This document shows, piece by piece, positions 16,387-64,000 of a DNA stretch of 64,000 nucleotides. Source of the DNA: Stylophora pistillata (lineage: Eukaryota). The notes beneath the pieces are model-generated. The model saw nothing but the letters and a program-made list of their open reading frames with translations. It ran no database searches and had not been told where the DNA came from. The translations under genes and the position numbers were made by a program. Location: positions 261,766 through 325,765 of the forward strand of contig NW_019217861.1 in assembly GCF_002571385.2 (NCBI RefSeq). Direction: 5' to 3'. Positions within the stretch are counted from its first letter, which is position 1, and the number at the start of each line of letters is the position of its first letter.

Positions 16387-19300
16387 TCAGTGATAGTTGG
16401 TGTTAATATTCCTAAGCGGCTTCTTGCCCTTAACAGATGGCTCAGGAGCTTTTAAGCCAGGAAATTGCGTCGTAATTTCTCCCGTGTCTGTGCTTGCTGT
16501 AACGTTTTTCGTTGGACGGCGTGTTCTAGAGCGAGGCGGTCTATTTCTTGTAAGTTGTACGAGTTGAGGGGTGTACGACTCTAAACAAGCAAACAAAGGG
16601 AAAAAACGACGCGTTACTATTAAGAGGTCGTTATGCTCTCCAATTTTATTGAACTGAAAAAAAATTGGGTTCCATTTTTTTAGAGGAGCTGACTTGGTTT
16701 ATTCATTGACTGAGGTCTGATTGTCTCAAGCACGTGAATAGCCGTTGTCAGTCTAAGAAGTACGTCCAACGGTTAAGCTAAGGACTTTCGCTACAGACGG
16801 TTCTGCAACGGACGGCTTAAAAAAATCAGTTCTCGGTGAATTCCAGCGTGGAAACGACTTGCTTTGATTGCGGTCTTATACACGACGCACTAACGAAACG
16901 CTCTTACTTAACATGCATAACGCTGCACATGCCAGCCTGTTTATACTTACCTAGTCCACTAAAGGAAGAGGGTTTTTCCTCACAGTTCTCTTCTTCCTGT
17001 ATCCATGAACATTGTCTTGTTAACAGTTTTGGGGACGAAAATGTTGCTTCAGCTGTAGCTTGTGTAGACCTAGAACGGACAAAGAAAACCGTTCGTTAGA
17101 AAGTCCACTTTCCATCCCGTTGCCCTTCCGTCATTGAAGGGTAAACAAGTCGTCAGCATCGAGTGCGGGTCAAAACGAGTTTGGTCCCAGTCCCTTTCGT
17201 CAATATCCTGTCAAATGTAAGTACGCGTAACCAAAGATGTTTTATCGTGATGATGTGGTGCAGCGACATTTTTCGCGCATCGTTGCCTGGAGACGACCCA
17301 TAAAGGTCAAACAGCTCTCAAACATCGCTGGTGGTAAAGCCCAGCTGAACATTTCTATCAGCTGTTTTGACTTGTACACCTAAGACACTTTTAAGCTGTA
17401 AGTTTTCGGTTATGTTTCTTGTATTTCTCATTTCTAAATTGTTTCTTTATTTTCTATATTGATTAGTTTACACTAAATGTAAGCCAGGAATTTTACACTG
17501 TTAAGTGTAATATTTAAAATTATTGAAGCCTTTATTTCTTATTTTTCATGAGAAGCTTTGTTCCAACTTTGAATTACATTAAAAAACTCACCCAGAGGCT
17601 TGGCTGTGTTTGGAATCAAACATCTACAGGAACATAAGTAATAAAAACTTGATTGAAATATTGCTTTGCACTTGTCTTGCCATTCTACTAAAAATGTACG
17701 TGTAGAGTAGTAAAATAGGCGGATTATTGAACATTGACTCTGGACAGTGTTAAATGAAGCCAAATCATGGTATCATCCTATCCTCTAGTCCAAGGATCAA
17801 GGAGATGTGGAATGCTTTATACACTGTTAGCAGGTTTTCTGTATTGTGGTTTTTCTCACCTATATATCAAACAACAAGCCACTGCGCCCCAACGTTAACT
17901 ACTCGGCAACTAGCCTGCAGAACAGACGTAGTTTTTTTGGCGTTTCTTAGTCGAACGGATGCGAACACAAGGGGAGTACAAAGTGCGAGTCACGTGCGAG
18001 GTGATAGGAGAAAAAAAATCTAACTTTCGCGCTCCTCCTCAAGCGCGCGACTCGTGCTTGCCTCGCGTTTGCTTCCGTTCCCCTGAAAACGGGAAAACTG
18101 AAACTACGCCTGTTCTTCAGCCTACTTGGCGACCGGTTCATGGATCAAGATGAAACGCGAATGCGTTCTACGGCAATTGTATCAAAATGTGCAGCACACA
18201 CTTGGAAAGGCTGTGCAATCTTCAATAAAAACTCTCAATTAGCTACAATAATGGCATACCTCAATCGGTTTGTCGAGAGAAAACTGTGCTGTGCTTAGGT
18301 CCAGAGATTTCACTCTTAGCCTGCCGCTTTCGCAAGCTCTAATTCCAGTGCTACAATGTATGATATCAAAAGTAAAACCTATTAATTAACTGATGAGAAC
18401 TGCTTACAAAGGAAAAGCAAAAAGGGGTTTATTTAATGTTCTGCCTGGAATGAATATTTATACTTACTAATTCTTATTTTTTTTTATTTATTTCTTATTT
18501 TTTTGTTGTTATTGCGGCAAGTTTCCTCATATGACGTTATCTAGGGAAAACAAACTCTTACATGCAAAAATTGGATCTTTGGACCTTTTGGCAGAAAAGA
18601 TCAGAACAGAAGAAACCAAGAAAATTTTATTAGGACACCATTACGGCAAAGAGCACTCTTAATCAGCCGACATTTTAACAAGTGCTACATGTCTGTTTTA
18701 TTGCTATGATTACCCATTGGATTATAAGCTCGACTATTGTAATTGTTTTGACGTAAACTTACTTTTTTCCCAGAACTTGACTAAAAGACACTGGTGTTTT
18801 TTAATGATATACACCTGTCTTACTGGCTACCAAGGAATAGATAGCTAGCTAGTAGCCTAGCCAATTAGATTGCAGCATTTGTGGTAAAACTCGATTGATA
18901 TCAACTTGCAAAGGATACGACGGACGTAAAATTTAAAATTTTTTGAAAATTGCTATTTGTAGCTCTTAAAAACTGTAAATTATATTGACTTACCGAGGGG
19001 TCTGGTTTTGCTTTGAATTAAATCTCTACGGGAAAGTATTAAAAAAATGAAAATTACATCTATGCAACGAAAAGTTCTCCAGATATACCAGAAGACCGAG
19101 TTGGTTGTATATAAGCCAGGGAAGAATAACTAAAGTACTGCTTAAATTGTTATTTTGGCTTTTAAATCGATGAAGTTCATCGGCTAACTGCGTTTGTTGA
19201 TATAGGATAATTCCATGGAAAGTGTATATGAACGATTTTTATTCACGAGTTACCCGCATCAAAAAAACGAACGAGTAACTGCAGCAAACGAGAGAGGCTG

Positions 19301-47629: not shown

Positions 47630-49690
47630 TACTGCACGAGATACTAACGTACGAATCCAGCGTTAGAGAATTCAAAAAGTGCGCGAGTACTGAAGTAATA
47701 ATTCAAAGTACGATAATCCCAGAAAATACACGAGATACTAAAGTAACAATCCAAAGTAAGATGATCCGGAAAATGTGCGAGATACTATTGTAACAATCGA
47801 ATGTAAGATAATCCGAAAATGCGCGAGATACTAACGTAACAATGCAACGCAAGATACTACCTAAAAGTGGGCGATATGCTAACCTAACAATCCAGGGTAA
47901 GATAATCCTAAAGATGCGCGAGATATTAACGTAACGATGTACGTTAACGTAGCTAAGTTAGTCCAATGGAAGGGAATCCTTAGAATGCGCGAAATGGTAA
48001 GGTACCAATCCAATGTAAGATAGTCCTTAAAAAGCACGAGATAATAAGATTACTATCCTCTATAAGATAACCCTAAAAATGCGCAGGGTGTTAACGCATC
48101 AATCAAATATGAAATAATATAAATAGAGCGCGAAATATTATTGTAACCGTCCAATGTAAGATAATCCAAAAAGTGCGCGAGACACTGAAGGTACAATCCA
48201 GAGTTAGATAATCACAGAAGATGCGCGAGATAATGACGTACAAATCCAAAGTAAGATGATCCAAATAATGCCCGACATACTATTGCAACAATCGAATGTA
48301 AGGTAATTCAACAAAATGCGCGAGATACTGACGTAAAAATGCAATGTAAAATAATCAAAAAAGCATGCGATATCCTAACCTAAACATCCAATGTTATTTA
48401 ATCTTTCTTAAATGCACGGGAGACCTATGGGCGAAAATCAAACGTATTATTCAAATAAAATTTTATCCTAAAAGTGCGCGAGATACTTACGTAAATTCCA
48501 ATTTAAGATAATACTGAAAATGCGTGAGAAACTAATGCAAAAATTGAATACTAGATAATCCATTGTGCGCGAGAGACTAACGTTAGATTTGAATGCAATG
48601 TAATTCAAAAACTGCGCGAGATACCAACCTAACAATCAAATGTAAGACAATCCAAACTATGCACGATGTAGTTACGTAACAGTCCAATTTAAGATAATGC
48701 AAAAAGAACGGAAGATACTATTGTAACAATTCAAAGTTAGATAATCCTAAAAGTGCGCCACATACATNNNNNNNNNNNNNNNNNNNNNNNNNNNNNNNNN
48801 NNNNNNNNNNNNNNNNNNNNNNNNNNNNNNNNNNNNNNNNNNNNNNNNNNNNNNNNNNNNNNNNNNNNNNNNNNNNNNNNNNNNNNNNNNNNNNNNNNNN
48901 NNNNNNNNNNNNNNNNNNNNNNNNNNNNNNNNNNNNNNNNNNNNNNNNNNNNNNNNNNNNNNNNNNNNNNNNNNNNNNNNNNNNNNNNNNNNNNNNNNNN
49001 NNNNNNNNNNNNNNNNNNNNNNNNNNNNNNNNNNNNNNNNNNNNNNNNNNNNNNNNNNNNNNNNNNNNNNNNNNNNNNNNNNNNNNNNNNNNNNNNNNNN
49101 NNNNNNNNNNNNNNNNNNNNNNNNNNNNNNNNNNNNNNNNNNNNNNNNNNNNNNNNNNNNNNNNNNNNNNNNNNNNNNNNNNNNNNNNNNNNNNNNNNNN
49201 NNNNNNNNNNNNNNNNNNNNNNNNNNNNNNNNNNNNNNNNNNNNNNNNNNNNNNNNNNNNNNNNNNNNNNNNNNNNNNNNNNNNNNNNNNNNNNGTAACA
49301 ATCGAATGTAAGATAATCCTAAAAGTGCACGAGATATTAACGTAACAATCGAATGTAAGATAATCATAAAAGTGCGCGAGATATTAACGTAACAGTCGAA
49401 TGTAAGATAATCCTAAAAGTGCGCGAGATATTAACGTAACAATCGAATGTAAGATGGTCTTAAAAGTGTGCGAGATATTAACGTAACAATCGAATGTAAG
49501 ATAATCCTAAAAGTGTGCGAGATATTAACGTAACAAACGAATGTAAGATAATCCAAAGGTACACGAGACGTTAATGTAACAATCGAATGCAAGATAATTC
49601 TAAAAGTGCGCGAGATATCAATGTAATAATCGAATGTAAGATAATCCTAAAAGTGCGCGAAAAACCAACGTAACAGTGGAACGCGAGAGA
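47630..49690. repeat. 47-bp satellite array spanning an N-gap
   Basis: Unit gagatattaacgtaacaatcgaatgtaagataatcctaaaagtgcgc, period 47 (e.g. 49331 to 49378). Confidence 0.95.
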
Positions 49691-52651: not shown

Positions 52652-54227
52652 ATGAGCTTTATCGAAAAAACACAAAAGACAAATTTGGGAGGTTTGAGTG
52701 CGCTCGTATTTAATTTTAATAAAAGGCACAAAACCGACAAAGGAACTACGTAACAAACAGTAAAACTTCGAGACTCGTTACACTCTTAAATTTGCTATTC
52801 TTACTTCACATCGCATGGTCGCATGATAAGTACATGTACGAGTCAATATATTACAATAGAAGTACAAAACTACTGGAAAGCCGTTCATTTACCAATTTTC
52901 AACATTACGTATAAATTAAATAACTCCTACCATAAGGAATTAATATTTTGTTTACAATTTTTGACTTCATAATTAATTTGTGTATGCCCAAGTAAAATGA
53001 TTCATATGGCCTGCGAGCTAGGGAGATTTAATGCCTATGCAAAAAAAAAGTCCCCTAATGCCGTTTTCATTCTTTTCCCGCTACCTACATCTAATAGTAT
53101 AATTTCCATTTTCAATATAATTGTGTCATTCATTTATCCAATACAAGTTAGATGGATAAAGTTTCAATCAAAAACGTTGAAACACTTCCCGATTACCTAT
53201 GATATAAGCTCCTTGCATTAAAATCATGGAAAATTATTTGATTGTTTTAATAACCGCGCGCAAAGCTAATAGCTGTGACAAAGTAGATTCTAGAGAATTT
53301 GATTCTTTCCTTCTTTTTCTGTTTTTCATATCTTATTGCATCCGTCTCAGGAGGCTTTGAGCGTATCAAATTGGCGCCTGCGCCACAGCATAATTAGTAT
53401 AACCTCATACCCACGGTTTCCTCAGGATGTTTTTTCCTTCGAGACCCTATGAAAGAGGTTGTATCTACAAAAGTTCTAATTACTTTAATTTCAGACTTGG
53501 TTGGCGAGACGAATTTTTAAAAGCGGTATTCCCCAAAAACCTTAGTAAATATTATCAGCGAAAGACGAAACGAATTACTTCTTTATTTTTTGGCTCCACA
53601 AAATCAGCTGTAAATGATATCAAAATGAGCGTAAACGAGAAGTACCACTAATCACGTTTCACGCGCTATATTAAAGCTGCCATGTAAGATTCAATTTAAA
53701 AAATCTCTTCAAAATTAGTGAAAGCTGATGGAGACACTCTCAATAGGAAAAGCGTCTATAAATTGCTGCAAACATATTGTCATTGACTCTATCGCTTAGA
53801 TCTAAGATTCCTTTGTAGAAGACACCGCATCTGTAAGAATCCTTTCAAATAGTTGCGTGACGACCCATGTCACACAAGACTTCATCTCATGGAGACTTGC
53901 CTGACGATCAATGTGACGTTGAGTTGAGGAAAACCCTGTGGTTCCTTTGACCAACGAAATCAAAACGGAGACAATATCTGTTATCGTTATTCATCCGTAT
54001 TTTTTCTGAGTACGTAAAATCATTTAAGTTTCACTGGTCGGCATCTTGGGTCTCCATTACCTTCAGAAAACACCTCGCAAGATCTCTTATTTCGCTTTGA
54101 TCCTGAAAGGCTTCCTTGAATGATGTAGAACCGGCAAACTCCAAAACCAGTGAAGAATCATCGTCGTTTACTCTTCCCTGAAGGCACAAATATAACACAC
54201 TCTGCAGGTTGAAAGTCACAGAATGTC

Positions 54228-57200
54228 TCATCTTTGAACTGCAAGCTCACGTAACTTGGTTCTTGTTGGCCTCCGCCGCCTGACTAGTGGTTGTCTGACG
54301 CGATTCTTTGTAAGATGAACTAACTGGACCGGGGTGGCTGTAAAGAAGAAGTAAAATAACATCAAACCCTAAACATGATTGACGGACAAATCATAGGGAG
54401 CACACCCAAAAGTGAAACTGAGAGAAGCAGGAAAGCAAGACATTTTTATTGAACTCTTTAACCCTTTACACAGTAGCATAAGTTTGCATATTCTCTCTCT
54501 AATATTCCCTTTTTGTCACAACATCACAAGGGGGGGGGGGGGAATTTTTTTTTGCGGCTCCACCTCCAAATAGCATTTCACTTCCAATATCTGGTCATCA
54601 ATTCTTCTTGCTAATTCCTGCTACAATTCTCTCTGAATTATTCACGAGAATTTGGTCTTTTATCTACAGGCCAGTGAAAGAAAGGACAGGGCGTGACGGC
54701 CAGTGAAAACAAAGTGTTATAGGTTGAAAAACTACTCACCAGGGAGGTCAAAGGAAACTGCGCACTCTTCCACTCTCTCCTCTTCAGTTCCCTCCAAGTC
54801 GTCATCTGTTTGACAGTCATCACTAGTCATGTCTTCTCCACTGTCTGCCCCCTTCCGGGGCTCCAAGCTTGTCAGTTTGGCTGTCAAAACAGCTCTAAAA
54901 GAAAAACAAAATTATATACGATACTGAAAAATTAAACTTTGTCCACAACTGAGAATTCCACCAGTACCAGAATTTGCCAAAACTTGACTATCAGTACCTT
55001 GAACATCCCTCCCCCCCAATAACAGTTTATGTTTAAGAATAAATGTGTGATTTCCCCGTTCGATATGGCACCCCACGGCACTCCACTGAGTTTGCATTCG
55101 CACTACTTGTTTTAAGTCTGAGGTAAGAATACCGTGGAGGGAAGCTACATGTTGATCACGGATGAAAGTAAAAGGATATCCCGATTGCCGATCACGTAGC
55201 AAATGATCTTCAAGTACATGTAGCAGAATGTTTGATAAGCTCCCATCATTAATACTCTTGAGTAGGAAGCGGTACTGTGATCAGACTGTCTTAATGATAA
55301 TGATAATGATGAAGGGTTTCTATGGCGCCATATCCTAAAGCTCATGGCGCTTTACCGCAGTTTGCGGGGGACTTTGGCCACACTGCATTGAGCAGTTTAC
55401 AACTGATGCCCCCAATATCAGAATCAACGCCAGACAGAGAAGATGCAGAAGACGGGGCCCACGGTTTTTCGTCCTTATCCGAGAAGACTAGAATGTCTCA
55501 CAGTTTTCAGATATCGTAGCAAAGGCAGCACATTCTCCTCAGTTATTTTAAGACCCAGAGTGCTGGTCCGGCCTAGGGCTAGACCCTCGACCTTTCGCAT
55601 GGCAGTCCGATGCTCTATAACATGAGCTGACGTGGCGGCACAAAATAATCACACCGCCAGGGCTTGAACTTGGGTCACAGATTCCGGAGTCCAGCGCGCT
55701 AACAGTCAGGTTATTACGTCTCACACGTTTCTGCGTACAGTTATGCGATAAAACTCTCACCTCTGTTCTCGAAAATCAGATAGTTGCCGCGTGAGAAGTC
55801 GCTTTTCTTCTTCTTCTTCTTCGCCTTCAAGACCGTTCTTTACCAAACCATCATCCTGTGATCAAAGAAAGCGTATTAAAGGGCGTAAAAAGTTAACAAA
55901 TGTTCGTTTTGGTAGAGTCGAAGCGAACTGTGTGACATGCTGACGTCCTATGCCGATCTCGCAACAAGCACACTATTACAAAAGACACTGTCACATGAAA
56001 GTCAGGGTGACCAAACAAGCACAGTCACACAACAGTAAAACCAACGCACTTGGCACAATTATACTACAGTTAAGGTAACGTTAGAGCCAGGTCACACAGG
56101 TCACACAACCCTCATACATATGTAAACGATACAGTCACACAACAGTCAACATAACATTAAAGGTGCAGTCACAGTACCACAACATTCATTGCCACAAATA
56201 ATTTGGAAGCACGTCCTCATTTAAACCGCTTCGGAACGTGCGTCTTGTTCACCCGCGGGAAAGTTCCAGGCCTTGGACAAAGTGAGCCGGCGAGAAGTCT
56301 GCCAGGGTGTCCTACTGATCACTGTTAGTGACAGATCCCCGTCAAACCTCCCCAGATCCCCGTTAAACCCCCCCAGATCCCCGTTAAACCTATCCCCAAA
56401 TCCCCGTCAAACTTCTCTCATTTAAAATTTCCCCGCGGGCGCAGAAACGCATTTCCTGCAGCATTTTTAATGAGGGCCTACTCGCAGGCTAGGTCACAAA
56501 GCGAAACTGTAACACAAAGTTGTCACAACAACATAAACGGCATACATGTAGTCAAACTATAACAAAAAAAAAAAAAAACGGCATGTAAATAGAAAAAGGA
56601 AGATGGCAAGGTTTGAACTCAGTAAAGAATAAAAGATGTTTTTCGTCTTGTCAAGAGCGTGGGACTAAGAAAAATTCTGAGTTAAAATGAGGGCTGTTGA
56701 AAAGACGAAAAACATCTTTCTCTAATAATGGTATGGTCACACAACAATTTACCGCAACATTATTGTCGCGACCCTAAAATGCGGTTTTCCTAACAGAAAA
56801 GTAACAACACATTACCTCTCCTTCGTTGACGTTCAACAAGGACAAGCGTCTGTGAGCAGATTCTGACGCAATATCAATTTCTCGGATGTTGTTGATGGTC
56901 GCTCGGATCTTGGATAACTGACCAAGAATAAGGGTTTCAAGACATCTAACAAATTAGAAAGCAAATGTTATAATTGAGAAGATCACAAAACATACTCATA
57001 ATGATAAATCGTTGCAAGTGGAACTGTTTCAAAACCTCTTTAGAGGCTAAGTTCTTTTTCGGGTTCGCTTTTCTGCAACTGGTTCGATTGCGAGTAATCT
57101 GCGTCTGTTTACCTCACCAGAACGTGCAGACTTACTTGGTCTGTTTACTGACGTCTTGCATGCTTTCCAACGCGCTCATTCCGGGGGGTGTGGCCATGAT

Positions 57201-60200
57201 ACACTGTGCCCAAATTATTGACAGAGCATTTGCATTCATAAGGTTCACCTCCTGTTGTTGTGTTATTCTACGAGACAAAAAAGGAGAAAATCAATTCGGT
57301 AAATTTACTTTCCTAGCCACAAGTTTGGTGAAATCGTGCGAATAGTTCACGTTGGTGTTAGTTTTGCCTACTCTTCAAAAACATACTTAACCTAAAGAAA
57401 CTTCATTTCACCGCAACTCCTCAGGCACTGTTTTTTTTTTTTTTTTAATCAAATTGGCTGAAGCTGAGTCAGTGCTCCACTTCAAATTGGTATTCACAAA
57501 TAGTTTAACGATCTTACCTGGCATTGACCTCGGGCCGATATTCTCCCAGTACGGCCCTCGCGCTCGGTTAATAAGATATATATCTTACCTGGCAAGATGA
57601 AAAACAAGTCTCTCCAAAGTGTTTTGACACGCTCGAGGTAACTTTTGTACCAGATTGTAAAGAGCTTGTAAACGTAACTTTTCATCGGATAGTTCTGCAA
57701 CAAAACAATGCAAAGTAGTGAGACCAATTTGTTTGTGCACCTCTCTTTGACCGCAGTAGGTGGCGAGTTTGAATCACAGCTGCAGCAAAAAGCTAGCCAA
57801 ATCGAGCTGATTGTCGATCAAAATTTGGCCACAAAAGTAACACACCACGAGACAACCGTGAAGAAGACATAAGTTGATAACGAAGGATAACATGGCTGAA
57901 CTGACCTGCAGTACGTATAAAATCCATGTAAAAATCTGCAGCAATAACGGGTACAGCCAGCTGCCGGAAGAATAGCTTCAAAACGCCAGCTACTACATGT
58001 ACAGTGTACTCGTCTAATGATACATTTTCAATTCCTGCGAAGAAATGCCGTCAAAATAAGCGGTATAACACTGTAAGTATGTAGGAGAGTCTTACAAGTG
58101 TGGTGGATCATCACTGCTCAAGTTAAATAAGATTTCCTTAGGTTAAGGTCGCGATAAGGAGTATTTCTTCTCCTCGTGGACGGGAAGCTAAACAATCTCA
58201 GCCAACCATTTACTCTCATGTAGGGCTAACGCTCGAAATGTCAGCATTAGAAACTCTCTACGGTGGCTAACTTAACTCCTTAACCTACTTGATGAAACCA
58301 AATTATCTTTTAATTCCCCTACCATCGCAGCACTACAGTATCTCTTGAAACTTTAGTACCCCCTTAACCCCTGAATGGTTCGTGTTGCTTACTAAAGGGC
58401 GGTGCGACGAACCAGGAACACAACATAACGCAATGACCCGGCCAGGGCTCAAATGCGGGCTCAAGTTCCGGAATCCAATGCGCATGCCTTAAAACCAACC
58501 AAAACGCCTCATGGAGAGACGAGACCATCTATTTTGCCGCTCTTTCACCCCCTGTGAAGTGGTTGAGCATACTGTTTGCGTCGCAGTTTCTAAGTAACGT
58601 GACGTGGTATTATCGTCGCTCAAATCAGAGCTGCGTAGTTACGTAGAAACGCTGGCAACATTAGAATAAAAACATCTAGAATATGTAAAAGTCAGAGAAA
58701 TCTCCACTCACCCACAGTACAAATTTCGTTCTTAAGCTTTTTTACTGCAACATTGCTCGGTGATTTTCTATAGAGACCCTCACTGTATAAACCTTCGTAT
58801 TCAGGAAAAAGGAATAGAAAATGAAAAATAAATAACATGGAGAAGAAATGAATGAGCACTTACAGAAACAAAACTGGATTTGTCTTGATTGCAGTCACAC
58901 AGAGCTCTTCATCACTAACATCACTGCGTCACTTTCTCTCATTTCAAGAATTAGTTAAAGTACCCAATGAACGATTCGATGACACGACTGACAATTTAAC
59001 CATTCTGTGATAAAGACCAACTTTGCCTTCGTCGGCCCTTGCACTGCAGCGACAGTTACTCATTCATTATTTCTTCATTTCTTTTAATCACTTCAAAGAA
59101 TCGTTGGCAGGTGACCACAATAACCACGTTACTTACCTCTCGCTTCAATATCTTGGATGAGTTTGTCCACTAATGGTGGTACAGAATTTTCATTCGATAC
59201 AAGGTCCGATAGGTCACCACCGAACAGTTCCGTCTGAAAAGAATCAATGAGCTCATATTGAATAAAACACAGGAAAGACCAGGGATAAATGTATAATACG
59301 ACGTGCAATTCTGTACTTCTAAATCGCACAAAAACTCCGCCAAAGTACAAAGGTGATCTCGGTATTAGAGCACCTTACCTTTCCTTTAGACCTGTTCGTT
59401 CCCTTTCTGCAAATGTTTTGAGACTTGGTATGACACTTCTTGTGGCAAGTGAATCTGCACTCTGCGAGAGACAAGGCAAATAGAGTTAGGAAGGTCGACT
59501 GACACACTTTAAATGAAATCCAATATTTCTACCATACTGCTTCATTGAGACTGACAAATTGCATAGAATGTGTACCCAGTGACCTACATCATTTGGGTAG
59601 TTTTCTTCTTGTACAACACATGATAAAAGGCCCACTGGATTCCCTTCTTTAAAGACCACCATGTTCATTTGTATTTGCATGTGTTCTCAATCAACACAGA
59701 GGTACTGAATACATGAACACTTAGCAAGTCATGTTCGAATTTTTCTTTTTGGACGTTTTTGCTTATCAAAAATGTTCAAAAAAGCTGACTTGTCGATTGC
59801 CAGTTTCAAATTACATAGCTGCAAAAACAGAATATTGGGCAGAGCTTTTAGCTACAATTCTGAAACAATAATCAAAATTAAGAAAAAAAGTGGGTACGGA
59901 ACCTTGGCAGACGAATGCTTTGTCCAATCCCCATATAAACCCTCCGCACTGCTCACAAAATGTCGGTATACTGAATTGAGTGGTAGAGAATCTATGACCG
60001 TTGAACAACTGCAGTAAAAAAGACACTTATCAAAACATGAGGAACAAAAACTGTCTGAAAACAATAATAACCGAGCTTAACTCTGCGCTTCCAAAATCTT
60101 AGAGTAAAGATTTAAAACTACGCTTGATGTACGACTCCGCAATCCACTACTGGACCACCTTCTCAGCCTTGTGGTGGGCTGGTCGCTCGGTGAGGCAAAC

Positions 60201-63200
60201 GCCATTACATGTACAGAATTATGTGCTACATAGCACGGTGAAACGAAGAGATCGAAGAGAGTTTATTTTACTTCTTTTCGAGTGTTGCCGATGAAAGCTT
60301 TACCGAAAACTTCTTATTGGCCGGTTTAAAATATGTACATAACTTACTGACAGGTCAATTTTAATTTTATTGCGCATCGGTAGATCGTGGAAACAATGTA
60401 TGTACTAAGTTGAGTCTTTAATTTTATGGTTTGTATGAGATAAACAAAGAGTATTGAAGATCGATATCAAATAATCATAATGACAATATTAAAATATAAC
60501 GAGTAAAATTGGCTGGGAGAAATGATAATTTACTGTAAAATTTCTCATTTCACGACGAGTCTTTACCACTGCAAGAAGGGTGAAATATCGCTCCATCCTT
60601 GATATATCCACATTTCTGTTCCCTTCCCCATACAATAGATCAACGAAAAGACAACACCATCAACAGAAAAATTCTAACGAAGAACGCCTGGCACAATTTT
60701 CGAGCCTTATTATCAAGATTGTTGCCAACCCGGACTTATAATTATTCGGTTTCCTTTTAAGTAAGAACATTTTAACGATCGAAGAAAAAGGAAGACTCCA
60801 AACATAATTAAATGTCTTGTTTACAATCCTCACCGTGAGCTCAGATGGTTTTCGCTTCTTCAAATGAGCTTTCTTTTGATGCTACGGAAGAGAAAAATTG
60901 GGAAAAAAATCAATATCAATGCTAAGTTGATCCGAACAGTGTAAACTCGCATAACATTTGCTCAGTCTCTGCAAGATAATAACTCTTGCCACCACATTAG
61001 TGGTCGTGGTGTGATAATCTAGAACTGCGAAACAAAACTTCTTTTTTTCGTATTTCTCTCAACTTCGTTGCAACTTCGTTGCATGTTCTTCGATGAGTAG
61101 TTTTTTTACCTTGTCCCTAGTGTGTTTGGCTTCCGATCGCGTTCTGTAAAAAAAGGAACAAACAAACAAACAAACAAAAAAAAACCCAATTGAGTGAGTA
61201 AGTGAGCATCAACCTTACAGAGTAAATATGGGCCACACTACAAGACGTTAGTAAAATCTGGCCTACATTCAAATTCGTTCAAATTGTTACATCAAAGAAC
61301 TAGTTTGCATGTCATTCTATTTGTCTTGTTTTTTTTTTTTTTTGTTTGTTTCCATTTTTTGATAAGTCATAGTTTTTGTTGGTCACCCTTACAGGCCATT
61401 TGTTTCCTAACCTCATTCCCATTCCTTTTCTTTGTCAACTTTGTTTGCATTTCCTTTCCATCTAGGCATCATTTACATGCAATTCGTTTCTCAGCCTCGT
61501 TTAGAGGTCACAAGCTATTGAGCCTCGTTTGGATGTCACAAGCTATTAAGCGTCACTCCATGAAAATAGTATGAACGCCTTTTCTATATCTTCAAGCCAC
61601 CGACTATTGATTATGACGAGTGCTACGATTGGCTATAGGATGCCTGATGAAACAGCCAATCACCTTAACGCGATGAACTCAGACAGCACCCCTCCGAAAG
61701 CATTCACACCCATAATGACAGGAAAATTGGCACTGATGCGTTCGCTTTTGATTGTCTTCTTCAGCGTGAATTCAAACTGACCCATCAAGTCTTCATAATT
61801 CAGAGTAAACGATTTGTCTTCCTGGAAGAAGAAAAAGTCAAACACGGTTGAAAAAATATTTCGGCAAAGCGACGTTTAACGTCTCTTATCCTGGATATCT
61901 AGGAAAAGCTTTTAACTAAAAATAAAAGTGGCTGAAAAGCTAAAAGATATTTGACGAAATATAAAAGATCACTATGCCATGGTTGATATACCTTCATGAG
62001 GACGGCGTACGATGAAATGAGTTGCATATGGAATTCTTGAAGAGCCTTTCTAAACACGCGGTCAACGATCGTGTCACGCTTATTTTCTTCTTTATTCAAA
62101 CTTGACACCTAGTAAAATACCAAAGAAAATATATGATCTCCGTTAAAAAACATAATATACAGAAATCCGGTGAGTTGTACCTTTCTCTCTCTGTCGTCTG
62201 TCTGTCTGATTGTCTGTGAGTGTGCGAGTGTGCGGGTGTGCGTGTGTGTGTGTGTGCGTGTGCGTGTGTGTGTGTGTGTGTGAGTCTGGGTTTGTGTGTG
62301 TGTGTATATTATACTGTCATTTGCTCTACGTCTGTCTGTCTGTATGTATGTCTGCTACACCGGCTCAATGCCAGTCTGTCTATTTGCTGATGAAGAGATT
62401 GGTACCTTATTCATAAGGAAAGCCTCTAGTGCACCCAATTCTTCAGTGCCCTGGATGAGCTTCCTGCCGGTATTTTTCCACTGGACGGGTCCCTGAGGGT
62501 GAGCATAGCTGACTATCTTGGTTTGTTTCAAGGCCTTAGTCATATCTGCAATACAACGATAGCATAGAAAGTGAGTGTTTTATGCATAAGACTTTTTAAA
62601 ATTACCAATGTATTGATATAGAATCAAGATACTTTCACTCCAATGATCTCAGCATTGAGTCTCCTTACCGTCTGTCATAAATTTCTTATAACGTTAGCTC
62701 TGAGAATTTAGTCTTCAATCATACAGGTTTCGCTTGTTGATGTTTTCCTTCACTCTTATCACCCTTCTACTTAACAACTCCTTGGAGTAAAAGAGTTAAG
62801 CGAACCAAAGAACCCAAGACCTGGCCAAAAATGTAAACGCCCTGTTTCTTGATTCAACAACAGAACCTAAAAGTAATATTCTGAACGACCGAGGTTATTT
62901 ACACAACCACTGAATAAGATTCTATTTTAACCCACTGGATTGATTTCCGTTTCATCACAGGTAAAGATCAATTTAACTGGAAATCACTGTAAGCATCAAC
63001 ACTTCAAATACTTTATGTCCTGACCAATCGAACATCTCGAATAAATATAGAATAATTTAGATCTCAAAATGATAAACTCAAGACTCAAATAAGGCCATGA
63101 TGCTCGCAGTTGAGCTGCAATTTAAGCAAATGCAGACGAGAAGCCTGAAAAACATTCAGGCTTTGCAAGGATTCAAACCCGTGCCACCCAGATACTAGTT

Positions 63201-63876
63201 GGGCGCCTTTACTGGCTGAGCTGCGAAGCCGCACGTTGAGAGGAGCACATTTCAGAGGGTTCTTCTTCCCCGTGGACGATTCTGATACAAATTGTAATGA
63301 AAATAAATTTCATTTGACCTGCGGAAAGATAACAAGTAAAGACTATCAACTCTAACCGTCACTTGATCCTATCCGCCCATCCAGCTCCACGGGTTTCTTT
63401 GCATTATTTCTGTTCAAACTGGAATCAGACTTTCTCCTGAATGAGTTCCTAGGCGCGATCTTGCGAAACAACCCTTTCTTGACCTTGCCACCATACTCAG
63501 TGCGACTGAGAGTGGCTGCAAAATCTGCCTTCTCAGTAGTTTTCCCAACAGCTAAATCATCCTGGAACAACGGGGGAGAGGTGGTTCTTCCTCGGTCATC
63601 CAGAACGTCCGAGGTGCTATACCGATGCCCGGGCTTCATTTTGGAGGAAAGGCGCTTTCGGAAACTACTGGTGAGTCTTCGTGAAAGTCTCGGGTTTGAC
63701 TTGAAATCGTCGCCCCTTTCGTTTCCTTTGTTAAAGGTGAGTGTCGGTGACGGAATGGGACTTAGCTTGGAGGGTGCCACGCGTTTGGTGGGCGAAGGAG
63801 AAAGCTCCAGCGGCGGTGGACGACTCCGCGCGAATTCAGGGCTGTTTGGTTCCGAATTGGATCTCTGGCGGACAAC
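54228..63876 (-). CDS. MYO9: Unconventional myosin IX-like (MYO9A/B family), C-terminal ~746 aa: tail, C1 domain, RhoGAP, coiled coil, CPI-like end; the 5' part lies beyond the window
   Basis: 17 phase-consistent exons: 63876-63357, 62545-62406, 62108-61992, 61821-61664, 61143-61110, 60881-60834, 60008-59903, 59461-59379, 59233-59137, 58792-58712, 58034-57906, 57694-57589, 57267-57136, 56945-56816, 55855-55761, 54894-54740, 54337-54228. C1: GHRFSTTQFSIPTFCEQC..FIWGLDKAFVCQECRFTCHKKC. RhoGAP: GLYSEGLYRKS...HVVAGVLKLFFRQL...TLERLVFHLARI...NLMNANALSII. The MYO9-type pre-C1 block DTIVDRVFRKALQEF...GVNAFGGVLSEF is present. The motor domain is not visible in this window. Confidence 0.88.
55300..55730 (-). 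mobile_element. SINE-like / tRNA-head repeats in a MYO9 intron
   Basis: The minus strand shows tRNA-like heads (gttagcgcgctggactccgga...cccaagttcaagccctgg and ttatagagcatcggactg...gtcgagggtctagccc). Similar pieces at about 58380-58500 and 63100-63330. Confidence 0.5.
56331..56412. repeat. ~20-bp tandem repeat (cagatccccgttaaaccccc) x4
   Basis: Directly visible. Confidence 0.85.
62185..62352. repeat. (GT)n / (CTGT)n microsatellite cluster
   Basis: Directly visible. Confidence 0.9.
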
Positions 63877-64000
63877 CTGAGATAAATCGAAGAGACTATT
63901 AACATCATTATTGTCAGTCATAAGTATCCTTTTCTCAAAAAGAACAAAAAGGAAAAAAAAAAAAAAGAGCAGAGTCGCACTTTCTAGAAAACATCCGTGA

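What the first reader, a model, noticed from the sequence alone, without database searches (positions are those of the whole stretch)
54228..54765. Myosin IX tail ends in a FAM21/CapZIP-type CPI motif
Seen: the last two exons splice to ...EECAVSFDLP|ATPVQLVHLTKNRVRQPLVRRRRPTRTKLRELAVQR*, with the core at 54323-54261. Established (recalled, not searched): CD2AP and CARMIL CPI has LxHxTxxR, and FAM21/WASHC2 and CapZIP have an upstream VSFDxP followed by a basic R-x-K...RRP-x-x-R block. All these elements are here in the right order. I know of no CPI motif described in vertebrate MYO9A/B. Inference: a motorised RhoGAP that could also carry or antagonise capping protein at barbed ends.
Basis: partly seen in the sequence, partly recalled or inferred. 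Interest (0 to 1): 0.82.

Follow-up and report, generated by a model that had tools for sequence, protein, structure and literature searches.

The report
Capping-protein motif in myosin IX tail
A coral myosin IX (a motor that also switches off Rho) ends in a short peptide that looks like the motif other proteins use to grab actin capping protein, and the same peptide is conserved in myosin IX from a single-celled relative of animals up to amphioxus but is missing in vertebrates, which would explain why nobody has described it.

Summary
The same transcripts run unbroken from the C1 and RhoGAP exons to a TGA at 54230-54228. RA domain, motor and IQ exons lie upstream on the same strand, so this is myosin IX.

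The peptide is not a coral oddity. The module FDLP, five residues, L-x-H-L-T-K-x-R, a proline, two basic residues, then P-x-(R/K)-(Y/F) sits in the post-RhoGAP tail of myosin IX in molluscs, annelids, a nemertean, chelicerates, a centipede, C. elegans HUM-7, echinoderms, a hemichordate, amphioxus and Capsaspora. Two other corals keep the terminal exon despite 31% nucleotide divergence.

It was not found in the vertebrate, pancrustacean or Lineus representatives.

A profile built only from non-cnidarian myosin IX scores the coral's own FAM21 capping-protein-binding region at 30 bits, against at most 11 for shuffles. The only PDB match to the coral exon profile is a CD2AP capping-protein-interaction peptide, and that match is weak (E 0.27).

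Pfam CAP-ZIP_m does not match. The consensus Lys-10 is not conserved. Binding to capping protein is untested.

No paper found links myosin IX with this motif.

The parts
54740..54894 (-). Penultimate coding exon: an acidic Ser/Asp/Glu-rich stretch ending ...EECAVSFDLP plus the first base of the next codon
   Evidence: Joints 54894|55761 and 54337|54740 in RNA. The frame is open. The exon is conserved at 72-89% identity in 14 short ORFs from related corals, and 13 of the 14 end ...FD(L/F)PG at the same boundary.
54741..54758 (-). VSFDLP, the upstream half of the module. The consensus across phyla is (V/T)FDLP.
   Evidence: F, D and P are shared by 80-90% of 22 sequences. The coral FAM21 gene has ASFDEP at the same distance from its motif.
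54338..54739 (-). Phase-1 intron of 402 nt with GT..AG ends
   Evidence: Several mollusc gene models read through at this same point (...FDLPG...), which suggests an old intron position.
54228..54337 (-). Coding part of the terminal exon (35 codons plus two bases that complete the split codon), with stop TGA at 54230-54228
   Evidence: The same exon, with its stop in the same place, is present in two other coral contigs, L017 and L018.
54261..54323 (-). CPI-like core LVHLTKNRVRQPLVRRRRPTR
   Evidence: L, H, T, K, R, the middle P, the RRR run and P-T-R are invariant in three corals. All amino-acid changes fall on the x positions.
53500..54227 (-). 3' untranslated region. It continues about 800 nt beyond 53500.
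   Evidence: RNA depth is continuous with the coding exons. One 1793-nt RNA contig spans it (tables 2 and 8).
55761..55855 (-). Tail exon with a Glu-rich stretch
   Evidence: Joints 54894|55761 and 55855|56816.
56816..59233 (-). Seven exons: the RhoGAP domain (59137-59233, 58712-58792, 57906-58034, 57589-57694, 57136-57267) and the conserved stretch that follows it (56816-56945)
   Evidence: RNA joints. Pfam RhoGAP hits on single exons. Colinear with Haliotis myosin IX.
59379..59999 (-). C1 (phorbol-ester type zinc finger) exons
   Evidence: Joint 59233|59379. The translation contains the C1 cysteine/histidine pattern. tblastn aligns to the C1 region of P0010.
61672..64000 (-). Further tail exons of the same gene. 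IQ, motor and RA exons lie beyond the window end, up to G000:C78:354127.

Best explanation
The last two exons of this coral's myosin IX gene encode a short linear motif of the capping-protein-interaction (CPI) type, in the extended form seen in FAM21/WASHC2. It has an upstream (V/T)FDLP, five residues, then L-x-H-L-T-K-x-R, a proline four residues on, a basic pair or run, and P-x-(R/K).

Shown here: the exons are expressed and spliced as read. The module is an ancestral, selectively maintained feature of class IX myosins, from Filasterea to cephalochordates. It resembles bona fide CPI motifs more than anything else that could be tested.

Inferred: the peptide lies in a disordered tail and wraps around the stalk of the capping protein alpha/beta heterodimer as other CPI motifs do. 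The motor-RhoGAP would then recruit capping protein, or lower its affinity for barbed ends and free it from V-1, at the sites where it also switches off Rho. Local Rho inactivation would thereby be coupled to control of barbed-end capping.

Vertebrates, pancrustaceans and at least one nemertean appear to have lost the module.
For: Expression and splicing: nine joints, three studies; open frame.

Gene identity: RA plus motor first exon and myosin-head hits upstream on the same strand. The gene is colinear with Haliotis myosin IX. All long hits of the first exon are annotated myosin IX.

Conservation across phyla.

Conservation within corals: nucleotide identity is 68-69%, with 15-16 synonymous against 7-9 non-synonymous codon differences. 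All non-synonymous changes lie at non-consensus positions.

Conservation peaks fall on F, D, P, then L, H, K, R, the middle P, and the P and R after the basic run.

Likeness to known CPI motifs:
- The consensus is LxHxTxxRPK(x)6P (PMC5491179).
- The myosin-IX profile scores the coral FAM21 CPI region at 30.1 bits. The best of 3000 shuffles scores 10.8, and the best of 2838 background ORFs scores 13.4.
- The coral exon profile searched against all of PDB finds only 7DS8 chain C, a CD2AP/twinfilin CPI peptide bound to capping protein.
- The Capsaspora copy reads L-D-H-..-RPKGP and keeps the RPK.

The partner exists: the genome has one capping protein alpha locus and one beta locus.
Against: No binding data and no co-fold are available.

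Consensus positions 9-10 (P-K) are not kept in most myosin IX copies. The corals have V-R, A-G or V-G. The equivalent lysine matters in CARMIL1 (K987) and in twinfilin (K325).

In corals the proline after the basic run lies two residues further out than in the consensus.

Pfam CAP-ZIP_m hits neither the coral exons nor four full-length orthologues, although it does hit the coral FAM21 gene.

The PDB match has E 0.27 and is not significant on its own. phmmer with the single exon found nothing.

Basic, proline-rich peptides tend to score against each other, although the shuffles control for composition.
Confidence: 0.62

Rival explanations
1. The module is a conserved short linear motif for a different partner. 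One candidate is a basophilic-kinase or 14-3-3 site at the (R/K)(R/K)xP(S/T)R(Y/F) end. Another is a docking site for a myosin-IX-specific regulator. On this reading the likeness to CPI motifs is convergence in basic, proline-rich sequence.
For: Lys-10 of the CPI consensus is not conserved. A Ser/Thr follows the basic pair in most orthologues. Pfam CAP-ZIP_m does not match.
Against: The conserved positions are the ones that define CPI motifs: L, H, T/N, R and the distal P. The upstream FDxP with its five-residue spacing is shared with FAM21 and adds to a 30-bit profile match. FAM21 has the same Ser/Thr after its basic pair. The only PDB hit is a CPI peptide.
Confidence: 0.25
2. The basic run acts without a specific protein partner, as a nuclear-localisation-like or membrane-binding polybasic patch or as an autoinhibitory tail. 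The flanking conserved residues would be structural context only.
For: Corals have RRRR or KRRR followed by further basic residues. Many CPI proteins carry membrane-binding basic regions next to the motif.
Against: A polybasic patch does not need an invariant L-x-H-L-T-K-x-R or FDLP. The basic run is the least well conserved part in length and identity.
Confidence: 0.08
3. The match is a chance resemblance or an annotation artefact. The two exons would belong to another gene or would be non-coding.
For: None found. Single exons gave no Pfam hit.
Against: RNA joints link them to the RhoGAP exons with the same read support as the other junctions. Synonymous changes exceed non-synonymous ones among corals. 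The module is present at the same place in orthologues of more than ten phyla.
Confidence: 0.03

Closest known systems
FAM21 / WASHC2 (WASHCAP) capping-protein-binding region (Pfam CAP-ZIP_m, also in CapZIP/RCSD1)
   Same: Both have an upstream SFDxP, a five-residue spacer, then L....K.R, about six residues, a basic pair, and P-P/x-(T/S)-R. The coral's own FAM21 copy aligns to the myosin-IX profile over 40 columns with one single-residue insertion, at 30.1 bits.
   Different: FAM21 in this coral has S and N where myosin IX keeps H and T, and it keeps Lys-10. The intron falls inside the motif in FAM21 but before it in myosin IX, so this is not a simple shared exon. The Pfam model does not reach myosin IX. 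The host protein is a WASH-complex subunit, not a motor.
CD2AP / CIN85 and CARMIL CPI motifs (consensus LxHxTxxRPK(x)6P; structures with capping protein, for example PDB 7DS8)
   Same: They share L-x-H-L-T-x-N-R and a proline at position 12. The CD2AP-derived peptide in 7DS8 is the only PDB match to the coral profile. The Capsaspora myosin IX keeps R-P-K-G-P as CD2AP does.
   Different: Most myosin IX copies lack P9 and K10. They carry an invariant K at position 6 and the upstream FDLP, which the CARMIL/CD2AP type is not known to need (recalled, not tested).
Dictyostelium CARMIL-GAP (PMC9270954), and the vertebrate SH3BP1-CD2AP-CapZ complex (PMC3514035)
   Same: A RhoGAP activity and a capping-protein-binding motif are combined, in one polypeptide or in one complex. 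This is the functional logic proposed here.
   Different: Neither has a motor domain. The GAP domains are of different origin. The link to capping protein has been tested experimentally in those systems but not here.
Vertebrate MYO9A / MYO9B
   Same: Same architecture: RA, motor, IQ, C1, RhoGAP and a low-complexity tail.
   Different: The module scores 3.2 bits or less in the ten vertebrate representatives examined (lamprey, hagfish, cod, frog, sturgeon and four teleost fishes). Alternative isoforms were not surveyed.

Membership tests
CPI motif (LxHxTxxRPK(x)6P; PMC5491179) | Leu at position 1 | tested here: met
   L at 54323-54321. It is the commonest residue in 90% of 22 aligned myosin IX tails and invariant in 3 corals.
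CPI motif (LxHxTxxRPK(x)6P; PMC5491179) | His at position 3 and Thr at position 5 | tested here: met
   H and T are present in the coral. H is shared by 90% of the alignment. T alternates with N in some phyla.
CPI motif (LxHxTxxRPK(x)6P; PMC5491179) | Arg at position 8 | tested here: met
   R is present, shared by 90% of the alignment, and invariant in corals.
CPI motif (LxHxTxxRPK(x)6P; PMC5491179) | Pro-Lys at positions 9-10 | tested here: not met
   This coral has V-R; the other two corals have A-G and V-G. Of the sequences examined, only Capsaspora has P-K, and C. elegans has P-P.
CPI motif (LxHxTxxRPK(x)6P; PMC5491179) | Pro six residues after position 10 (position 17) | tested here: inconclusive
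   The proline is at position 17 in amphioxus, sea urchin, Haliotis and scorpion. It is at 18 in the mite and C. elegans, and at 19 in the three corals.
CPI motif (LxHxTxxRPK(x)6P; PMC5491179) | Direct binding to the capping protein alpha/beta heterodimer | not testable with these tools
Pfam CAP-ZIP_m (PF15255; FAM21 and CapZIP) | Match to the family profile | tested here: not met
   There was no hit at E up to 10 on the coral exons or on four full-length orthologues. The genome-wide scan hits only the FAM21 locus on contig C7.
Pfam CAP-ZIP_m (PF15255; FAM21 and CapZIP) | SFDxP upstream of the basic CPI block, with fixed spacing | tested here: met
   Coral FAM21 has SFDEP, then 5 residues, then L. 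Coral myosin IX has SFDLP, then 5 residues, then L.
Class IX myosin | N-terminal RA domain, motor, IQ motifs, C1 and RhoGAP in one gene | tested here: met
   The orthologues carry the same Pfam set.

The most novel reading that the evidence does not exclude
Class IX myosins are an ancient, so far unrecognised family of capping-protein-interaction proteins. On this reading the common ancestor of animals and Capsaspora already had a motor-RhoGAP that binds capping protein through a FAM21-like tail motif. Local Rho inactivation and barbed-end capping would then be controlled by one moving protein. Vertebrates and pancrustaceans lost this link.
Probability: 0.55. Interest if true: 0.8.

Novelty: new member of a known kind. 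Interest (0 to 1): 0.74.

Why it matters
CPI-motif proteins decide where and how strongly capping protein acts. The known families are few: CARMIL, CD2AP/CIN85, CKIP, CapZIP, FAM21, twinfilin and some fungal and bacterial cases. None of them is a motor.

A myosin that carries both a RhoGAP and a capping-protein handle would link two main controls of actin assembly in one molecule. It would also give class IX myosins a function that cannot be seen in the vertebrate proteins on which nearly all work has been done.

C. elegans HUM-7 retains a version of the motif, so the idea can be tested directly by genetics and with peptides.

Tried and rejected
- Pfam on single exons and on four full-length orthologues gave no CAP-ZIP_m or other tail family.
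- phmmer of the single terminal exon against PDB found nothing.
- The protein atlas gave no usable hit for the 36-residue exon.
- A word-index search with the scorpion module as the region gave only 5 candidates and found only itself and a near-identical fragment, so it says nothing about relatives.
The contigs behind the 14 coral ORFs therefore could not be read. Two metagenome contigs served instead.
- An ORF on G000:C784 with a CPI-like peptide and a sub-threshold CARMIL_C hit could not be confirmed as CARMIL, so it is not used as evidence.
- Complex prediction was not run, because no full-length capping protein alpha or beta could be obtained as a session sequence.
- The joined (spliced) protein model was never sent to any database search tool. 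Searches were done exon by exon, by reference. The exons were joined only inside local scripts, to check the frame and to score against a locally built profile.
- The Hernandez-Valladares 2010 paper and the Edwards 2014 review are not held in the library.

Full report
**What is in the sequence.**
- On the minus strand an exon ends with the codons for V-S-F-D-L-P plus one base at 54740, followed by GTGAGT.
- After 402 nt a polypyrimidine tract and CAG precede an exon that starts at 54337.
- The phase-1 junction gives ...VSFDLP|ATPVQ.
- It is followed by the 21-residue core at 54323-54261, eleven more residues, and TGA at 54230-54228.

**Expression and gene model.** The window is G000:C78:261766-325765 of a 398-Mb coral assembly. 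I laid two sets of RNA contigs from polyA libraries, one metatranscriptome and one set of raw stranded reads on 53500-59400.
- The joint 54337|54740 is present in contigs from two studies, and in 33 raw reads with 23 different starts from a third.
- Eight further GT..AG joints, each with 19-42 raw reads, chain the exons 59379-, 59137-59233, 58712-58792, 57906-58034, 57589-57694, 57136-57267, 56816-56945, 55761-55855, 54740-54894 and 54337 downwards.
- All first mates lie on the + strand, as expected for a minus-strand RNA in a stranded library.
- Read depth continues into a 3' untranslated region of at least 1.5 kb.
- Joined in a local script, these exons give one open frame from the C1 zinc finger through the RhoGAP domain to the stop. 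Single exons hit Pfam RhoGAP.
- Upstream on the same strand, beyond the window, lie a 280-codon first exon encoding an RA domain and the start of the motor, and further myosin-head exons.
- A Haliotis myosin IX aligns colinearly over residues 16-1774, from there down to the RhoGAP exons.

The gene is therefore a class IX myosin, and the two exons are its constitutive 3' end in these samples.

**Conservation.** I used the first exon to search 1.84 billion representative proteins and read the tails of the long hits. Many have, 150-200 residues after the RhoGAP domain, the same module: (E)EYA(V/L)(T/S)FDLP, about five residues, L-x-H-L-T-K-x-R, a proline four residues later, a basic pair, and P-x-(R/K)-(Y/F).

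Cluster look-ups, a second search and a local profile place the module in these groups:
- gastropods, bivalves, cephalopods and a chiton;
- the annelids Capitella and Ridgeia;
- the nemertean Tubulanus;
- the centipede Strigamia, a scorpion and a mite;
- C. elegans HUM-7 (a variant with Y for H);
- sea urchins, and in degenerate form a crinoid;
- the hemichordate Glandiceps;
- three Branchiostoma species;
- the filasterean Capsaspora, whose copy keeps R-P-K-G-P.

In an alignment of 22 tails the conservation peaks fall on F, D, P, then L, H, K, R, the middle P, and the P and R after the basic pair.

The module scores 3.2 bits or less in several groups:
- lamprey, hagfish, cod, frog, sturgeon and four teleost representatives of MYO9A/B;
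- lobster, damselfly and soldier fly;
- Lineus isoforms.

Sponges, ctenophores, placozoans and choanoflagellates were not sampled.

**Conservation among corals.**
- The penultimate exon was found in 14 short ORFs from related corals at 72-89% identity. Thirteen of the 14 end ...FD(L/F)PG at the same boundary.
- Two metagenome contigs also carry the terminal exon, with the stop at the same place.
- Their nucleotide identity to the window is only 68-69%. There are 15-16 synonymous and 7-9 non-synonymous codon differences.
- Every amino-acid change lies at a position that the motif leaves free. That is the pattern expected of purifying selection on the motif.

**Is it a capping-protein-interaction motif?** The published consensus is LxHxTxxRPK(x)6P (PMC5491179).
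- The coral peptide has L, H, T and R in register. It has V-R instead of P-K, and the distal proline lies two residues further out. In several other phyla the distal proline is exactly at position 17.
- Pfam CAP-ZIP_m, the model for the FAM21/CapZIP region, hits neither the coral exons nor four full-length orthologues.
- It does find the coral's own FAM21 gene on contig C7. That gene reads SFDEP, five residues, L-E-S-T-N-K-V-R-A-K, and then KRRPPTR.
- A profile built only from 22 non-cnidarian myosin IX modules scores this FAM21 region at 30.1 bits over 40 columns. The best of 3000 shuffles of the same residues scores 10.8.
- A profile of the three coral terminal exons, searched against all 177,635 distinct PDB sequences, returns one hit. 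It is chain C of 7DS8, a CD2AP/twinfilin CPI peptide, and it aligns over L-x-H-L-T-x-N-R-..-P. At E 0.27 this is only suggestive, but it was the sole match.

Together these results show that the module resembles genuine CPI motifs, most closely the FAM21 type.

**What weighs against binding.** Lys-10 is not conserved, yet the corresponding lysine is important in CARMIL1 and twinfilin. Nothing here tests binding. I could not run the complex prediction, because full-length capping protein sequences were not obtainable within the rules. The coral has one alpha and one beta locus, both split into short exons.

**Mechanism proposed.** This part is inference. The disordered tail peptide would bind the stalk of capping protein as other CPI motifs do. 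Myosin IX would then recruit capping protein, or tune its capping activity and free it from V-1, at the places where its RhoGAP lowers Rho activity.

There are precedents for pairing a RhoGAP with a CPI motif:
- Dictyostelium CARMIL-GAP (PMC9270954);
- the SH3BP1-CD2AP-CapZ complex (PMC3514035).

**Novelty.** Full-text searches found no paper that mentions myosin IX or Myo9 or HUM-7 together with a CPI motif. The scan's own notes hold nothing similar on other DNA. The absence of the module from vertebrates and from Drosophila-like model insects is a plausible reason for this.

**Limits.**
- The spliced protein was never sent to a database search. It was joined only inside local scripts.
- The identity of the organisms behind contigs L017 and L018 is not known.
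- Vertebrate alternative isoforms were not surveyed.

Noticed in passing
window 16390-16580 (-), with exons near 18.25-18.30, 19.62-19.70 and 20.81-20.90 kb (-): A second terminal exon on the same strand begins, also in phase 1, with ..SYTPQ followed by L-V-Q-L-T-R-N-R-P-P and a distal R-R-P-T-K. It is preceded by three exons that each end FSLDKPIE. The myosin-IX profile scores it at only 12.9 bits. It looks like a separate small gene with its own CPI-like motif (note s1-791429). No RNA joint links it to the myosin IX exons within the stretch laid.
   Followed up: partly
window 57526-57583 and 55468-55561: Short intronic elements show RNA depth in the thousands on both strands. The 58-bp one has at least 40 copies at 93-100% identity across the genome. 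It is a dispersed short repeat whose reads come from other copies, and it has no Rfam match.
   Followed up: partly
window 54228-54260, compared with the C-termini of P0010, P0016, P0019, P0026 and P0028: Coral myosin IX stops 11 residues after the motif. Most bilaterian orthologues continue for 40-100 residues, and many of them end in a hydrophobic-Met-Val terminus that looks like a PDZ ligand.
   Followed up: no
proteins P0184, P0209, P0212, P0215, P0235, P0238 (mollusc gene models): These models read ...F(D/E)(L/I/V)P and then run into unrelated residues, four of them starting with G as expected from a retained GT donor. This looks like an intron retained or mispredicted exactly where the coral intron lies. 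The intron position seems old, and some annotated isoforms may lack the motif artificially.
   Followed up: no
G000:C784:43092-43358 (L014:1414-3267:+): A 618-codon open frame holds L-E-N-L-T-K-S-R-P-R-S-P-R-R-R-S-P, which is CPI-like. It has a CARMIL_C hit just below the Pfam cut-off, and no Pfam hit at all when scanned alone. It is possibly the coral CARMIL, but this is unconfirmed.
   Followed up: partly
window about 47650-49650 (with an N run at about 48.8-49.3 kb), and 62100-62350: The first stretch translates into a repeating peptide in several frames, which suggests a tandem repeat interrupted by a masked gap. The second is a CA/GT-type microsatellite in an intron of the myosin gene. 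The N run was left as it is.
   Followed up: no
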